From Stylophora pistillata (lineage: Eukaryota): a DNA stretch of 64,000 nt. The notes below the pieces were generated by a model. It ran no database searches. It saw nothing but the letters and a program-made list of their open reading frames with translations, and was not told the DNA's origin. A program made the position numbers and the translations under genes. Below, piece after piece: positions 43,174 to 58,600 of this stretch; position 1 is the stretch's first letter, and the number at the start of each line of letters is the position of its first letter. The stretch covers positions 467,792 to 531,791 of the forward strand of contig NW_019217900.1 of NCBI RefSeq assembly GCF_002571385.2. The letters run 5' to 3'.

Positions 43174-46149
43174 TCAAAATCCGCGAACCATTGGTTGCAT
43201 CGGAATATTAGCGTTGGTGGTTGTCGAAGTTGTTGCCATGATAACAGGTCCCACAGCAGGGGTAGGTTGCACAATAACGGTATTCTGATTGGATGAACGA
43301 CAGTTGCAGCAGTTACAGCAACAGCAACAACAACAGCTCGAGATGATCAAGATGATGATTATTGTCCAGCCACTGATCACTGATGCCTTGGTGGCGTCAC
43401 TCAGATTGTGCCACCAACCAAAGATACCTAGATCAAAATGCAAACAATGTTAATTGAACTAAGTGGAGGGCACTTTGGTCTGAAATCAATCATTTTTTTC
43501 TGAAATCACAAGTGCGATTTCAGAAAAAAATTTCATGAAACGAAGTCTAATTATCACTTTATTAAATATATATTTTGAAATAGAACATTATTTTTTTAAA
43601 AAATAAGATGAGTTTTAAGACAAGAGTTGCAAAATTTGCAACGCAGTGAGTCTTTGTCTTTCCATAGACATTGAAGAAATTTACACACTTTTTTTTTGGT
43701 AACATAGAAGAATGTGTGGAATTCGAGACCATAAGCTCGGCATAGAAAGTGTTAACGAATGAGTGTTAAGATTCAGAATTAAAGATTTACCACATCCGTC
43801 TCTCTTGATTGGTAGACTCCCCTCAATCAATGTCGCTTTTACAGGATAAACACCTTTACCGATGATCTTTCCTCCAGCCAACAGCTTTACCTGAAGGAAG
43901 ATTAACAAGTCCATGTTGCTCTCTGCTTCACGTGATTATCGGACTTCTTAGGATTCATAGCTGAGTGTGTTCTTCTAGAAGAATTAGATTTAGCTACTTT
44001 TCTAAGGTTAGTGGTGTGTTTCTCTAGATAAAGCCCGCGAGTAAGCCCTCGTTATACATAGGAGTTTAAGAAAACGACAACGGCAACGGGAACGTCACTA
44101 AACAAAAGGTTTTAATGAACAGAACAATGGCTGCGCGCGTGCTTTTAAATCTTTGTACATTTCTTTGCGTCCTCTGAAAAACAACAACGTCAAATGACCA
44201 AACTTTGCGTGGTCTGGAGAACGTGAACGACGACGGCTAATTTTTTTACATTTCTATTTCTAATTGAACGCTGTGATCCATATTTAGTTTCGAGATAGTT
44301 TTAGCAGTGAGAAACAACATAATGATTTTGGAGTATCACGGGATTCGTAGGTAAAATATAATTTCATTTTTTACCCGACGTTATCCACGGCGTCGCAGTC
44401 GTCGTTTCTTGAACTCCCTAATAATTTAAGCACGGTAGGACGCGTGTTTTTCAGCTGGGGAGTTTGCCAGGGTCTGCCTGCCCGCTTTGTTCAAGGACTT
44501 AGACTCTTTTGCGGGTATTCATAGAATGAGTCTCACACGAAGTTAGAATACCACCGACCGTTAAACGCAGTCTATCGTCGTCTGGAGTGAGAGAGACTTG
44601 AACGTAAACACCGGCAGACAATGGAAAACCGGATACCGACAAACTGAATCCTGGGACTTCAACTATGTCGTCACTGGTGTAAGTATGGGACCAAGAGATG
44701 TGCAGATCAGGTACATCTATTGAAGCTGTTACACTGACCGGGTCATCACATTTATTGACCTTGCGGGGAAGATAAGATATCAGATTAAACTCGGTGACAA
44801 TGGAAGACTGGAAAGAATAAGCATTCTGCTTTCATTTCAATCATTTTTGGGTTGATTTAAATGTTGAAATATACTATTACAGTGTTACGTTTTTGTCGTC
44901 CAGGGCACTCTCGATACTTTCTTTGAAAATTGATGAATAACTTACAAAATTTATGAACTCAAATACCTCCAACTTGTATGTCATTGCTTTTTCGACAAAC
45001 TTCATTTTACATCTAACTATATCGCAATCATCACTGATATTGCAGCCATCATCAAGCGTATTGGAACCACAAGTATAGCTCCTTTTTGCTTTACAGACAG
45101 ATGAAAAAATACTTTATTAGTTAAATTATTTTCATCACATGACATCAAAACCCAACTGAGGAAACAAACTTAACCATATATTTTGTTTTTATTAGAGGTA
45201 TCTTCATCATTTTCAGAAATTTCCTTTTCATAGTCGCTAAAACCTTGTACGGGTTACTGAATTTTACTCGTTATCATGGCTTTCAAGCTCTGCTCGCTGT
45301 TTACGCTTGGACAACACACCTTTCAAATCCCTGGCTTTCTGATAAAAATTTACATTCGTCTAGTTGTATGAATATTTAATTGGCAGGACAACACTCTTTA
45401 GTCATGAAGTCATTCGTGAATCTTACTGTATTGGAGAAGGAGAATGATCTCTTGTACGAAGCAAAAACCTCATTTTTGTTTCCTTTTTCTTCGCATTGCA
45501 CCTTTTTGTTCGTTTGTTTTTCCTTTGGTGATTTTCTAAGAATTTCATTGTATTGCAGTCCTTGAATCACAGCTGAAGTCTCGATTCTCTGAACGAAATT
45601 TCATGATTTTTTTCAACCATTGGCATTTTTAACCAGCAAAGCTTGAGCACCTTGCCTAAGCTTTAGTGACCTACCACCAAAGGTCCGTAACGGTAAAATT
45701 TGGCGCTCAGGTTGATATAACGTAAGGGGTTACGGAAGCGCTGCACGCTGCTGCAGCATGGATGTTCGTTCTAAGCGCTCCATCTCCAATAACAACAACG
45801 GCTTAACTGCACGATTTATCGCTCAGGATAATTTTTTTCTGAATCACATTCGTCATAATAAATCCATAATTTATTTTAACATCCCACAAATATCAAACTT
45901 TTCCCCTAATATAGTTTTACCACAGGGAAGTGCCATTCATTTTAGACTCGAAATTTTAGTATTTCGTTTCCTTGAATAATGAATATTTGTTGAAAAAGAA
46001 AAAAAGGAAAAAAATAAGAAAAGGAGAAAGAAAAATTAAGAGACGAAAATAGAACCAAAATAAAAAAATATACCTGGTGCTGAGCAAATGAGTTGGCTTA
46101 ACATAAGGACGCTTAAACTTTGTTGAACACCATTAATGAACGTAGCCAT
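43174..46149 (-). CDS. Poly-Cys family member C, about 250-273 aa; exons 46149-46074, (possible 45243-45175), 45088-44967, 44759-44559, 43890-43791, 43427-43174
   Basis: Phase-consistent GT-AG exons; exons of 76, 201 and 100 nt match gene A in size. MATFINGVQQSLSVLMLSQLICSAP / KRSYTCGSNTLDDGCNISDDCDIVRC / VNKCDDPVSV / VKLLAGG..DGC / TM + CCCCCCCNCCNC ... IPMQPMVRGF*. The acidic 69-nt exon is uncertain. Confidence 0.87.
44060..44419. mobile_element. Harbinger-like MITE in an intron of gene C
   Basis: Ends AGGAGTTTAAGAAAACGAC and GTCGTTTCTTGAACTCCCT. Not seen in the homologous intron of gene D. Confidence 0.8.
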
Positions 46150-46217
46150 GGTCTCGAGAGATTGACTTCTCTGTGTTCAACTTCAGCTTCGGTTCAGCTT
46201 AAAAAAGCAAAGATTCT

Positions 46218-55605: not shown

Positions 55606-55653
55606 CAGGAACACATCCAATTTTCACCTGTGTTAAACTACAAGTTAAGGATC

Positions 55654-58600
55654 ATGGCAACGACTCTTCTCTCCCTGTTGGTTTTTAGTCTTTTATCGAC
55701 AACACTAGGTAAGAGCTTAGCAATGTCATGTGATGTTTGTTACCTTAAAGACGATGTACGCTTCCTCCGCCATCACGAGTCATATCAATGCGCTGGTGCT
55801 AATGTTTCGGAGGAAGTTCATTTCCCCGCGAGAGCGTAAGGAATGATCCGTTTCGTATTCAAAAATTATAAATAGGTTAAAAAATGTTTTGGGAATTTAT
55901 TCATCTGTGCGATGCAAAACTGGCTTTGTCTTTCAAGTTTACTCACTTTCACACTGTTTACGTTAAGGCCGGACAAAAACATTAGTCGTGTCGTCTTGTT
56001 CCTCGCCAAACATTTGACATTTATTTGCATCATAGAATGTAGAGAAAACTAAAAGCTGTAAATTAAGATCTTTATTAGTGAGGTGTCCTCTAAGTAGTCC
56101 AAGAGTTTCGAATAAACCGATCGGTAGTGCGTCTGAAAAGTCCTTACGCGTCATCGATTTCATTGTATTCGAAGCTTCGTGTTTGAAAGTGATTTATGAC
56201 GCTTACACCTTTTCAGTTCCATGGAAATCCAAATTGACAAAATAGCACAATTTGTCATGTGGAGGATATCTAACCAATTATCCATGGATGAACTTGGAAC
56301 AGGAGACCGGAATGATAATTGATTCTAACGATTCGAAAGGACATCAGGGAAATTTCGAATAATCGATCGAAGCCAGCCACGTTAGACAATTTAGGTGCAA
56401 GACGAGTTTCACTGAGCGAAGACCTCTCTGATACACAGAACAGTTTTCTTTTTTTTTTCAATTTTAAATAACAAGATCATCAAATCGCTCAAACGTTATA
56501 CAGTATACCAAAGTTGTCATTCGTTTAAACGTGCATTTTAAGAAAGAATTTTAATTAAAAGGAAAATGAAAGTACAGTATGATTAATGTTTAATTCCCAC
56601 CGAATGCTATGGGCGGAAAAATCGAAGTTTTTCCTATTTCTGCTGCAAATTAAACGTTGTAAACTTTATACCGTGTTGCCCATACGATTCGATATCCTAA
56701 CAGTGTTACCTTCAGTGGGTAGTTTTAATTTTAGTACTTGCGGTGCCGATATCGAGGATAAGATTCTTGTCGTTTTAAGTGTATATCGCTTTACGTAGTG
56801 GCCAAATATATTTAATTTACATGCAAGGGACTGCCACGGTAATTTCAAAGAAAGCGGAGAGATTTTAGCGCTGTTACATAAGATGCCCGATGAAATGGGA
56901 AAGATATAGATTCAAGTGCACGGCGAGTTATATCGTTGCAGAGACTGTGTGTGTTTTTGAACACTCCTGGATTCAGTATTCGTTTCTTCTACAAGTTTTT
57001 ACAACTTCCTCCTTCCACTATTTACAGCTCTTCACTTCATGATAGGATCTTTAGCAGGAAGGAAGACGTCGATTAAAATATAGCGATATTTAACAAACGG
57101 TAAACACCACAGCGTACACTATTGAGTTATGGATGCACGCGGGAGGTTGCTAAGCACGAAAGAAGCGTAAGAGTCGCGCGAGACGATAGCCGAGAGCGAC
57201 TCTATCTTCTTGAGTGGTTAGCAAACCTCCCAAGTGTATCCATAACTCAATAGTGTACACTGTGGCGTTTACCATTTGTTTTATAACATAACATTGATAC
57301 AGTGTAGCGAGAGTTTCCTTTTATTTAACAAATCTTAAGTGACCAAAAACAAGCGCGCGCGGAAAACTAGTCTTTGCATTTGCTCACGTCAGCAGCGTAC
57401 ACCCATGGACAAATGGGGGACGCTGAATTGACCAATCAGAACGCGTGCTTTGCTTTGGTTATGTTATAATTTTAGTTAGAATTTAGAAAATGGCTGAGAG
57501 TGTTTAGTGTCTCCTACTTCAGCATAACGAATGGAAGAGGCTTTGAGTCTCAAATAAAGACTTCAGTAATTTGCCGTTGGAGTTTCTGTTCCCAGACCAC
57601 GTAAATTTTGGTGATTTCACGGTACTGTTTTACGGAGAATGGCTGAGAAATGCACAAAGTTTTAAAACGCACGTGCTGAGCCACTGTTCTACCCTTCAGA
57701 TCATTGGTTTTGCTGAGTCCTCATTTATGTCGCCCCGGTGTGATTTGCGGAACCCTATCATCTCCTTACTGTCTGCCATACAATTCTTCTGATATTGGTT
57801 TAGAGAATTTAGCATTGGATCAACTACTGATCCTCCAATTGATATTTTTCTTTATTCTCATTACTTGTCTGCTTGATATTGTGTCGATGATCATGTGAGG
57901 AAAAATTCTGTCTTGGTCACTGGTGGGAGCTAAACGGTTAAAGAGGTCTCTAACAGAAACACCCGCATACAAAGACCCCAATTTTCCAAGAGACTAGAAC
58001 AAGTCTTGAAGAGGCTCAAATATATAAAAAGCAAGACCTATGCTTTTCTTTCGATTTTCCTTCAGATAATTTTATCTATTTAGTATTGACCACTACTGAT
58101 TATTCATAATTGATTTATTATTTTTTTCGAAGGTTGGCAAGACGAATGTCGTCTTGAACTGGCCCCCAGTCTTCCTCTTCCTATCAAATGTAACGCCACG
58201 TCTTATTACTGTGAACAAATCACGTGTTCAACTCCTTTCAGTAACGAGGATATCACACTGAATGTGGATTTTAACCCATGGGATGATCCCATGAGTGCTT
58301 ACGTTACCCTATCAGTTCCGAAGCTTAGATTTGATTGGTCGGCCAGCGTAAAGGATGGAGAGCAAATTGAGGTTCCCGGATTTCCACTGGATATTGAAGG
58401 GTTACCAGTCGGAAAGGTTGATGCTTCCATTCGAGTTGCCATGACGAAAGATAATGATACCCTTAGCTTCGAGGTAACCTCCCGTCTCATTGCAATTTGA
58501 ATTACTGTTAAAAGTTCTTTTTTGGTTGATTTTCAAGTCAAGTATATTGGTCACTATGATTCATCAAATATTTTTGTTCAAGCATGATTTATATAAACGC

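What the first reader, a model, noticed from the sequence alone, without database searches (positions are those of the whole stretch)
45950..56400. Exon-1 swap by duplication plus inversion created chimeric gene D and orphaned exon E
Seen: the head-to-head block [C-type exon 1 and promoter on -, F-type exon 1 on +] occurs twice (about 46.0-48.1 kb and 54.0-56.4 kb). Between them, C-type exons 2-5 with C-like introns lie on the + strand, opposite to their cognate first exon E and in frame (phase 1) behind the F-type exon at 46670. E has acquired a TAA while D's first exon is open. F-intron homology persists to about 48125 (48050-48120 resembles 56325-56395) and C homology starts at about 49050, so the left junction coincides with the TIR element at 48134-49040. 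Inference: a gene body was rewired to a new leader exon by inversion.
Basis: partly seen in the sequence, partly recalled or inferred. Interest (0 to 1): 0.78.

Follow-up and report, generated by a model that had tools for sequence, protein, structure and literature searches.

The report
Chimeric coral gene made by inversion
In a reef coral's gene cluster, a duplicated gene body was flipped so that it now sits behind the first exon of a neighbouring paralogue and is spliced to it, which gave an expressed chimeric gene and left the body's own first exon stranded and dead; every junction can be traced, but this way of making a new gene structure is already known.

Summary

- **Repeat structure:** the head-to-head block (C-type exon 1 and promoter on the minus strand, F-type exon 1 on the plus strand) occurs twice. 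An inverted copy of the C gene body lies between the two copies.
- **Splicing:** RNA from three studies joins 46733 to 49161 (GT..AG). It also shows the other three D introns. Three further assembled mRNA contigs (protein P0012) have the same structure.
- **Outgroup:** the syntenic Pocillopora verrucosa locus has a single C|F head-to-head pair and no D or E.
- **New junctions:**
  - A tandem-duplication junction lies at about 51333-51340. There the C-type coding sequence, cut 5-6 codons before its stop, meets F intron 1.
  - The reciprocal right-hand inversion junction lies at 51683/51684. There inverted F-type intron meets C-type intron 1 leading to E.
- **Left junction:** it carries a non-autonomous TIR transposon at 48125-49040, not 48134, together with deletions.
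- **Dead exon E:** E has TAA at codon 17.
- **State of D:** D keeps the signal peptide, ectodomain, membrane span and poly-Cys. It has lost the family's conserved cytoplasmic tail, so it may be either a tail-less new gene or a decaying one.

This is a well-resolved new member of a known kind of event. Interest is moderate.

The parts
43174..46149 (-). Gene C, the intact C-type parent copy. Its 5 coding exons are 46149-46074, 45088-44967, 44759-44559, 43890-43791 and 43427-43174. It encodes 250 aa: signal peptide, ectodomain, membrane span, poly-Cys and the conserved tail.
   Evidence: Exon-by-exon translation with GT/AG at every boundary. The gene is colinear with the 250-aa gene of P. verrucosa in L013.
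46150..46418 (-). C 5' region and promoter block. It is duplicated at 54081-54354 (E side).
   Evidence: 88-90% identity to the E copy. It is about 80% identical to P. verrucosa.
46670..46733 (+). D exon 1 coding part. It is an F-type signal-peptide exon of 21 codons plus 1 nt, so phase 1. The mRNA 5' ends seen lie at about 46640-46656, with one contig reaching 46494.
   Evidence: Alignment to F exon 1, translation, RNA depth and splice joint, and mRNA contigs.
46734..49160 (+). D intron 1, a composite. F-type intron sequence runs to about 48118. The TIR element follows, then about 105 nt of C-type intron 1 (49056-49160). The window haplotype also carries recent TE insertions at 47193-47463 and 47589-48037.
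   Evidence: Searches give the homology. One search shows the intron removed in RNA (skips 2427, GT..AG). Searches show the insertions are absent from alternative contig C2545.
48125..49040 (.). Non-autonomous TIR DNA element at the left inversion junction. The left TIR is intact. The right TIR lacks its outer ~10 nt.
   Evidence: Dozens of copies at 70-82% identity in the same genome. The termini were compared with 5 other copies. A 2.4-kb copy has no long ORF.
49161..51211 (+). D exons 2-5, the C-type body. Exons are 49161-49282, 49874-50059, 50462-50537 and 51089-51211, with the TGA stop at 51209-51211. The ORF is 190 aa in the window allele.
   Evidence: Splice joints in RNA, exon-wise translation, and inverted homology to C and to the P. 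verrucosa C orthologue.
51333..51340 (.). Tandem-duplication junction. The C-type coding sequence, cut 5-6 codons before its stop, is joined to F-type intron 1 at about position 56800. Both sides now lie inverted inside D's 3' UTR.
   Evidence: Three-way alignments with C, F and both P. verrucosa orthologous regions. BLAST ends at 43189/51338 and 56804/51337.
51337..51683 (-). Inverted piece of F-type intron 1, corresponding to about 56804-56557. A small repeat is inserted at 51493-51603. The piece is transcribed as part of D's 3' UTR.
   Evidence: Searches give the homology. One search shows the inserted repeat has copies elsewhere in the genome. RNA contigs reach 51738.
51683..51684 (.). Right-hand inversion junction. 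Inverted F-type intron meets C-type intron 1, at about 45841 in C coordinates, in its original minus orientation.
   Evidence: Alignments A5 and A6 with the P. verrucosa F and C introns. The junction is spanned by DNA-like contig X3 record 19 and by RNA contigs.
51684..54004 (-). Remnant of E intron 1. The single-copy pieces are 51684-51717 and 53849-54004, matching C 45841-46073. They are split by about 2.1 kb of nested transposons at 51718-53848.
   Evidence: Searches give the homology. One search shows the intervening stretch is all multi-copy.
54005..54080 (-). E, the orphaned C-type exon 1. The ATG is at 54080-54078. TAA at codon 17 lies at 54032-54030. The GT donor is retained at 54004-54003.
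55654..55708 (+). F exon 1 coding part, 18 codons plus 1 nt, so phase 1. This is the parent of D's exon 1. F intron 1 runs to about 58131.
   Evidence: Orthologue cluster P0016/P0117/P0119 in three Pocillopora species.

Best explanation
**Ancestral state.** A C-type gene on the minus strand and an F-type gene on the plus strand lay head to head. Both belong to one cnidarian family of small type I membrane proteins.

**Step 1, tandem duplication.** A segment was duplicated in tandem. It ran from just inside the 3' end of the C coding sequence to about 1.1 kb into F intron 1.

**Step 2, inversion.** One break fell in the F-type intron of the first copy. The other fell in C-type intron 1 of the second copy. 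The inversion flipped the second C body. That body now lies on the plus strand, 2.4 kb downstream of the duplicated F-type exon 1.

**Why the frame survives.** In every member the signal-peptide exon ends in phase 1. The swap therefore keeps the reading frame.

**Result.** Gene D is transcribed and spliced as F-type leader plus C-type exons 2-5. Its 3' UTR is built from inverted F-intron DNA. The second copy's own exon 1 (E) was left without a body and picked up a stop codon.

**Shown:**
- the architecture;
- all three junctions;
- the ancestral state in an outgroup;
- the chimeric spliced mRNA.

**Inferred:**
- the order of events (two steps);
- any role of the transposon at the left junction;
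- that D still makes a useful protein, namely a membrane-anchored ectodomain without the family's conserved cytoplasmic tail.
For: **Architecture and RNA**
- Repeat architecture.
- Splice joint 46733|49161 (GT..AG).
  - It appears in two poly-A RNA contig sets: X16 at depth 78.5 with a 76-nt side, and X18.
  - It also appears in 12 stranded raw reads at 9 start sites in X24, all with the first mate on the minus strand.
- Introns 49283-49873, 50060-50461 and 50538-51088 are also removed.
- mRNA contigs L010-L012 from three SRA runs carry the same five exons at 94-100% identity. They encode P0012, which has an F-type signal peptide and a C-type body.

**Gene models**
- Exon-wise frames are open.
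- C, E and F models show phase 1 after exon 1 in all three.

**Outgroup**
- P. verrucosa L013 has the order B-like(-), C-like(-), F-like(+), with no D or E.
- Both D's body and the 51421-51663 piece align to it in inverted orientation.

**Junctions and their support**
- Junctions are resolved against the outgroup.
- Independent contigs cross the junctions.
  - X3 records 15 and 19.
  - Alternative contig C2545 across 48038-48252.
- D's body is single copy in the assembly.

**Selection**
- C-D dN/dS is 0.50.
- The D branch is about 0.43 by three-point arithmetic.
Against: **Limits of the structural evidence**
- No long DNA read spanning all of 46-55 kb was available.
- Short-read contigs break at the transposons.
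- The stretch 48729-49011 is covered only by multi-copy sequence.

**Dating problems**
- The duplicated blocks do not all look the same age.
- The C/E promoter and exon 1 block is 89% identical. All other blocks are 75-85%.
- D's branch is about twice C's, even in mostly intronic sequence. The duplication could therefore pre-date the Stylophora/Pocillopora split.

**Signs that D may be decaying**
- D has lost the conserved tail. It is frame-shifted after the poly-Cys, and the C-equivalent frame has TAA.
- D has an 8-codon deletion in exon 4 and a 5-codon deletion in exon 3.
- Two D alleles differ by 18 nonsynonymous against 4 synonymous changes.
Confidence: 0.88

Rival explanations
1. This was one complex replication-based event, not two steps. 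Template switching (FoSTeS/MMBIR type) would produce the duplication and the inverted segment together.
For: All three junctions lie within 3.6 kb. The two clean junctions show only a few bases of possible microhomology. The left junction has deletions on both sides. The same alternative pair, repeat-mediated recombination or FoSTeS, is discussed for the human CYP19A1 inversions (PMC3272822).
Against: The structure is explained exactly by a simple head-to-tail duplication junction plus a reciprocal two-break inversion. Nothing in the sequence requires a single event. After about 25% divergence, junction microhomology cannot be judged reliably.
Confidence: 0.25
2. D is a transcribed but decaying gene, an expressed pseudogene, rather than a functional new gene.
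For: The conserved C-terminal tail (PPxY-like and VPMQPLVNE motifs in the family) is lost. The stop position differs between alleles, giving 190 against 257 aa. D has deletions of conserved ectodomain residues. Between-allele dN/dS is about 1.2.
Against: Four introns keep canonical sites and are spliced correctly in every RNA set. The ORF is open through signal peptide, ectodomain, membrane span and poly-Cys in both alleles, despite about 25% neutral divergence since the duplication. The D-branch dN/dS is about 0.4. The stop lies in the last exon, so no nonsense-mediated decay is expected. The ectodomain of P0012 folds confidently, with pLDDT 82-95 over residues 35-135.
Confidence: 0.35
3. This is an assembly artefact. 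The 49.0-51.7 kb block is really in minus orientation behind E exon 1.
For: The block is flanked by multi-copy transposons, including a 98% identical inverted pair at 47612-47906 and 52174-52468. Such repeats can mislead assemblers.
Against: The cis-spliced mRNA joins D exon 1 to exon 2 on one strand in three studies and in three further contigs. Contigs from other samples cross 48038-48252, 49011-49634 and 51217-51737. The right junction joins inverted F intron to E intron 1 inside single-copy sequence. There are no N gaps here.
Confidence: 0.02
4. A copy of the C body was captured and pasted, inverted, into the F-type intron by the TIR transposon. This would be transduplication or aberrant transposition, without a reciprocal inversion.
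For: The TIR element sits exactly at the left junction, and its right end is truncated there.
Against: The element borders the body on one side only. The other side of the body carries the C 3' end fused to inverted distal F intron, then the proximal part of C-type intron 1 and exon E. The pieces on the two sides are complementary. That pattern marks an inversion, not an insertion. Other copies of the element carry no captured gene fragments among those seen.
Confidence: 0.05

Closest known systems
Inversion-type rearrangements at human CYP19A1 (aromatase excess syndrome)
   Same: An inversion places the coding exons of one gene behind exon 1 of a neighbouring gene. Exon 1 is spliced to the common acceptor of exon 2, which gives a chimeric mRNA under a foreign leader and promoter (PMC3272822).
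   Different: In the human cases exon 1 is non-coding, the events are recent pathogenic alleles, and the partners are unrelated genes. Here exon 1 encodes the signal peptide and phase 1 is matched. The partners are paralogues made by a preceding tandem duplication. The event is old (about 25% neutral divergence) and is present in all samples examined.
Chimeric genes arising from tandem and segmental duplications (for example the Drosophila yakuba/simulans surveys)
   Same: A duplication whose ends fall inside two neighbouring genes creates partial gene copies that can fuse into a new transcription unit. PMC4069613 is listed. I read only its title and abstract.
   Different: The tandem duplication alone would not have fused these two genes, because they are divergently oriented. 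A second step, the inversion, was needed.
Tandemly duplicated gene clusters of reef corals
   Same: The locus is a cluster of at least five paralogues. Tandem duplicates make up about a third of genes in some coral genomes (PMC10236652).
   Different: That work counts duplicated genes. As far as I read it, it does not describe inversion-made chimeras.
Exon shuffling at phase-1 introns after signal-peptide exons (general knowledge, not tested against the literature here)
   Same: The swap works because C-type, D and F-type first exons all end in phase 1.
   Different: Only the leader exon was exchanged between close paralogues, so the mature protein is not a domain mosaic.

Membership tests
Chimeric gene formed by inversion (first-exon swap) | Two identifiable parental genes contribute different exons | tested here: met
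   Exon 1 matches F exon 1 (92% over 65 nt). Exons 2-5 match C, and match the P. verrucosa C orthologue.
Chimeric gene formed by inversion (first-exon swap) | Both reciprocal breakpoint junctions are present, with complementary pieces of the broken introns | tested here: met
   The right junction is at 51683/51684. The left junction lies in 48118-49056, with deletions and a transposon.
Chimeric gene formed by inversion (first-exon swap) | A transcript is spliced across the breakpoint with the frame kept | tested here: met
   One search shows the joint 46733|49161 in three RNA runs. One search gives the mRNA contigs. One search shows phase 1 on both sides.
Chimeric gene formed by inversion (first-exon swap) | The ancestral uninverted state is seen in an outgroup | tested here: met
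   P. verrucosa L013 has a single C|F pair.
Tandem segmental duplication | A head-to-tail junction joins the end of the unit to its start | tested here: met
   At 51333-51340 the C 3' end (43189) abuts F intron 1 (about 56804).
Retrocopy or processed pseudogene (considered for D's body) | Introns are absent and a poly-A tract is present | tested here: not met
   D keeps all C-type introns, with intron homology.
TIR DNA transposon (element 48125-49040) | Terminal inverted repeats and many dispersed copies | tested here: met
   The TIR is about 34 nt. There are dozens of copies at 70-82% identity.
TIR DNA transposon (element 48125-49040) | A target-site duplication, and a transposase that assigns the superfamily | tested here: inconclusive
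   No clear duplication could be read from 5 copies. A 2.4-kb copy has no long ORF.
Cnidarian type I membrane protein family (no Pfam; P0016, P0026 and relatives) | Signal peptide, beta-rich Cys-containing ectodomain, one membrane span and a juxtamembrane poly-Cys | tested here: met
   Exon translations, alignment A4, and the P0012 model with strands over residues 37-143 and a helix over 159-189.
Cnidarian type I membrane protein family (no Pfam; P0016, P0026 and relatives) | Conserved cytoplasmic tail ending in VPMQPLVNE-like motif | tested here: not met
   C keeps the tail. D is frame-shifted and stops at 51209-51211. P0012 reads an unrelated frame.

The most novel reading that the evidence does not exclude
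D may be a functional, lineage-specific, tail-less receptor variant, acting as a decoy or modulator of the C-type protein. It would have been born in one stroke when the inversion gave a 3'-truncated duplicate a new leader exon, a new compact divergent promoter shared with C, and a 3' UTR made from intron DNA. The excess of amino-acid differences between D alleles would then reflect diversifying selection on an immune-type surface protein rather than decay.
Probability: 0.25. Interest if true: 0.6.

Novelty: new member of a known kind. Interest (0 to 1): 0.42.

Why it matters
**A complete record of gene birth.** This example comes from a non-model animal and keeps an unusually full set of evidence:
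- both parents;
- the duplication junction;
- both inversion junctions;
- the dead leftover exon;
- the unrearranged outgroup;
- the spliced chimeric mRNA.

**What it shows.**
- Matched intron phase after signal-peptide exons lets rearrangements exchange leaders and promoters among secreted or membrane paralogues.
- A 3' UTR can be recruited from inverted intron DNA.

**What it does not change.** It does not alter what is known about how chimeric genes arise. The protein family is uncharacterised, so the biological consequence is open.

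Tried and rejected
**Protein family identity**
- Pfam on single exons and on full-length relatives found nothing above cut-off.
- The P0012 model was searched in the PDB.
  - Foldseek gave no match below E 0.02.
  - VIA-align wide gave a best Z of 6.3, which is within noise.
- The ESM Atlas returned only an unnamed cnidarian cluster.
- The fold and function therefore remain unassigned.

**The 98% inverted pair as cause of the inversion**
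- I considered whether the pair at 47612-47906 and 52174-52468 caused the inversion.
- Rejected for two reasons. The F-type intron piece 48039-48118 inside the pair is in direct orientation, and the left arm is missing from alternative contig C2545.

**Other checks**
- Retrocopy origin is rejected because the introns are kept.
- A second (haplotig) copy of D's body in the assembly was not found.
- D-type proteins in other species: only P0012 among 108 family representatives has the D signature.
- Transposon superfamily: not resolved.
- Literature look-up of orthologue identifiers: no papers.

The window's own D and C coding sequences were never joined for a search or a fold. Exons were handled singly by reference. 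The database protein P0012, an allele of D, stood in for the spliced product.

Full report
**Setting**

The window is nuclear DNA of a reef coral. The runs that hold it are labelled with one coral species or as coral metagenomes. The assembly has 397.6 Mb in 5,513 contigs.

The nearest named relatives of its proteins are Pocillopora species, at about 77% amino-acid identity for the main exon of F. From this I take it to be a pocilloporid, probably Stylophora. That is my inference and was not told to me.

A tblastn of the exon peptides finds one family of paralogues along the window:
- A at about 29.9-32.0 kb (-)
- B at about 38.3-39.6 kb (-)
- C at 43.2-46.1 kb (-)
- D at 46.7-51.2 kb (+)
- an isolated C-type first exon, E, at 54.0-54.1 kb (-)
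- F from 55.65 kb (+)

Direct repeats:
- 46062-46418 matches 53993-54354 (88%).
- 46642-47103 matches 55624-56101 (70%; 92% over the exon).
- 48039-48118 matches 56311-56390 (74-76%).

Inverted repeats: the C body at 43189-45190 matches 49056-51338 in four blocks of 70-80%.

There are no N gaps between 45 and 57 kb.

Gene models, exon by exon with GT/AG at every border:
- C is intact, with 5 exons and 250 aa.
- D exon 1 (ATG at 46670, ending at 46733) and F exon 1 (55654-55708) both end in phase 1. So does C exon 1 (46149-46074).
- D exon 2 (from 49161) is open only in the frame that phase 1 requires.
- E (54080-54005, minus strand) keeps its ATG and GT donor. It reads MVAFMNGFKQGLSVLM followed by a stop, with TAA at 54032-54030 where C has TTA.

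**The chimeric transcript is real**

I laid one DNA-like run and three RNA runs on 45950-51900. The joint 46733|49161 (GT..AG, skipping 2,427 nt) is present in:
- a poly-A RNA contig of X16 (depth 78.5, with 76 nt on the exon 1 side);
- a contig of X18;
- 12 raw stranded reads at 9 start sites in X24, all with the first mate on the minus strand. That is the usual sign of a plus-strand RNA.

These runs come from three different studies. The same runs show removal of introns 49283-49873, 50060-50461 and 50538-51088.

Separately, a profile search with the exon 3 peptides of the five paralogues returned P0012 (257 aa). Its N-terminus is D's F-type signal peptide and its body is D's C-type sequence. 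P0012 is encoded on three assembled RNA contigs, L010-L012. These match D's five exons at 94-100% identity and run to 51738. Those three SRA runs may overlap the coded runs above, so I do not count them as further studies.

C exon 1 had almost no RNA in the runs where D is expressed.

**The ancestral state**

The F orthologue of Pocillopora verrucosa sits in locus L013. The gene order there is B-like (-), C-like (-, 250 aa), F-like (+, 241 aa), then a further paralogue (+). There is one head-to-head C|F pair, and nothing that corresponds to D or E.

How the window aligns to L013:
- C, including all of intron 1, and F with its upstream region and intron 1, are colinear with it.
- D's body aligns to the Pocillopora C gene in inverted orientation.
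- 51421-51663 aligns to Pocillopora F intron 1, also in inverted orientation.
- The 1.3-kb intergenic region of the right-hand block is ancestral.
- The left-hand block has lost about 1.05 kb of that region. Only about 28 nt upstream of D's ATG are still F-like.

**Three junctions**

1. *Duplication junction, 51333-51340.* Homology to the C coding sequence stops at ...ATGCAAC, which is 5-6 codons before C's stop. Homology to F intron 1 (about position 56800) starts within a few bases. Both were checked against the Pocillopora orthologous sequences. This is the head-to-tail junction of a tandem duplication. The duplicated unit ran from the end of the C coding sequence to about 1.1 kb into F intron 1. 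The second C copy was therefore born without its last codons and 3' UTR.

2. *Right inversion junction, 51683/51684.* The inverted F-intron piece (51337-51683, corresponding to 56804-56557) abuts GAATCACAC... This sequence is C-type intron 1 (C position about 45841) in its original minus orientation. Both sides were again confirmed by the Pocillopora introns. From 51718 to 53848 everything is nested multi-copy transposon sequence. After that, 53849-54004 resumes C-type intron 1 up to E's donor.

3. *Left inversion junction, 48118 to 49056.*
   - The F-type intron ends at a position corresponding to about 56390.
   - C-type intron 1 resumes at a position corresponding to about 45190.
   - Compared with the clean right junction, about 167 nt of F intron and about 650 nt of C intron are missing. 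Both missing stretches are ancestral, because Pocillopora has them.
   - The gap holds a 916-nt non-autonomous TIR element at 48125-49040. It belongs to a family with dozens of old copies. Its left TIR is complete and its right TIR lacks the outer ~10 nt.

The pieces on the two sides of the flipped segment are complementary. That pattern marks a reciprocal inversion, not a pasted-in copy.

**Assembly support**

Contigs from other material cross the critical points:
- X3 record 15 spans 49011-49634, from the element's right end into D exon 2.
- X3 record 19 spans 51217-51737, covering both clean junctions.
- RNA contigs span 51311-51738.
- A second contig of the same assembly, C2545 (L009), is 99.85% identical to C's body. 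It runs through C exon 1, D exon 1 and D intron 1 into the element.

C2545 lacks 47193-47463 and 47589-48037. The 98% inverted arm at 47612-47906 is therefore a recent polymorphic insertion, not the cause of the old inversion.

No single long read spans the whole region.

**Age**

On columns shared by the two window copies and Pocillopora:
- Most duplicated blocks are 75-85% identical. That is about as far apart as either copy is from Pocillopora.
- The event therefore dates to roughly the time the two genera split.
- The F-type blocks fit a duplication just after the split.
- D's body has a branch about twice as long as C's.
- The C/E promoter and exon 1 block is only 11% diverged.

I cannot reconcile these figures. 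Gene conversion between the two direct promoter copies and faster change in D are the simplest ideas.

**State of D**

The window allele encodes 190 aa: signal peptide, ectodomain, membrane span and poly-Cys, then TGA at 51209-51211.

The family's conserved tail is kept by C. In relatives it carries a PPSY-like motif and ends in VPMQPLVNE. In D the tail is unreadable:
- the frame is shifted after the poly-Cys;
- the C-equivalent frame has TAA;
- P0012 reads 67 more residues of an unrelated frame.

D also lacks 5 codons in exon 3 and 8 codons in exon 4.

Evidence against plain decay:
- All splice sites work.
- The ORF through the membrane span is open in both alleles after about 25% neutral divergence.
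- C-D dN/dS is 0.50.
- A three-point split of the values gives about 0.43 for the D branch (my arithmetic).
- The P0012 ectodomain models as a confident beta structure, with pLDDT 82-95.

Evidence pointing the other way: the two D alleles differ by 18 nonsynonymous against 4 synonymous changes.

I put a functional protein at roughly 0.6 and an expressed decaying gene at about 0.35.

**Family**

- There is no Pfam match.
- There are 108 representatives in the 1.84-billion-protein library, and those carrying a source name are coral proteins.
- The only named members are "uncharacterized" proteins of Orbicella and Pocillopora.
- The Atlas cluster is cnidarian.
- No convincing structural neighbour was found.

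**How it compares with known cases**

The mechanism is that of the CYP19A1 inversions in aromatase excess syndrome. There, exon 1 of a neighbouring gene becomes spliced to the coding exons (PMC3272822). It also resembles chimeric genes born from duplications whose ends fall within genes.

The particular features here are:
- the preceding tandem duplication supplied both partners;
- the swapped exon is coding and phase-matched;
- the 3' UTR came from inverted intron DNA;
- every footprint is preserved.

It is a new member of a known kind.

Exons were handled one by one by reference, and the database protein P0012 served as D's product.

Noticed in passing
window 47612-47906 and 52174-52468: These inverted arms are 98% identical. 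Other copies of their repeat family in the genome are only 78-86% like them. The left arm is absent from alternative contig C2545, so it is recent and probably a local copy. The arms bracket D exons 2-5. Recombination between them would turn the body back towards E exon 1. No read shows this.
   Followed up: partly
window 48251-48503: This segment inside the TIR element is inverted in alternative contig C2545 (L009). One DNA contig of run X3 supports this, with a joint at 48250/48493 on opposite strands. It looks like a small polymorphic inversion.
   Followed up: partly
window 46560-46635: A GTTATGC-type minisatellite lies just upstream of D's start codon. Its length varies between samples: X3 has a joint from 46574 to 46649, and L010 skips 46593-46628. 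It lies in or next to D's 5' UTR and carries several ATGs.
   Followed up: no
window 46150-46418 and 54081-54354: The C and E promoter copies are 89% identical, about half as diverged as every other duplicated block. Both keep GGAAATTTCC / GGAAAATTCC (kappa-B-like) and TTCTGGGAA / TTCCGGGAA (GAS-like) motifs. Another note of this scan (s1-775571) flags these.
   Followed up: partly
window 49161-51211 versus P0012 / L010-L012: The D alleles differ by 18 nonsynonymous and 4 synonymous changes in 151 codons. The two TGA codons after the poly-Cys in the window are TGG in P0012, giving a 190-aa against a 257-aa ORF. All four laid runs carry the P0012-type bases at 49168-49169.
   Followed up: partly
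window 45141-45961 versus L009 2143-2327: In alternative contig C2545, C intron 1 is about 640 nt shorter: 185 nt replace 821 nt. The long form is the ancestral one, because it aligns to Pocillopora.
   Followed up: no
window 267-2424, 6129-8291, 15093-16985 (also 5433-6933 with 14432-15910): A separate set of about 2-kb direct repeats at 80-84% identity lies in the first 17 kb of the window. This is another tandemly duplicated unit and was not examined.
   Followed up: no
window 46074-46149 (C exon 1): There was almost no RNA over C exon 1 in the three RNA runs in which D, 520 nt away on the other strand, is clearly expressed.
   Followed up: no
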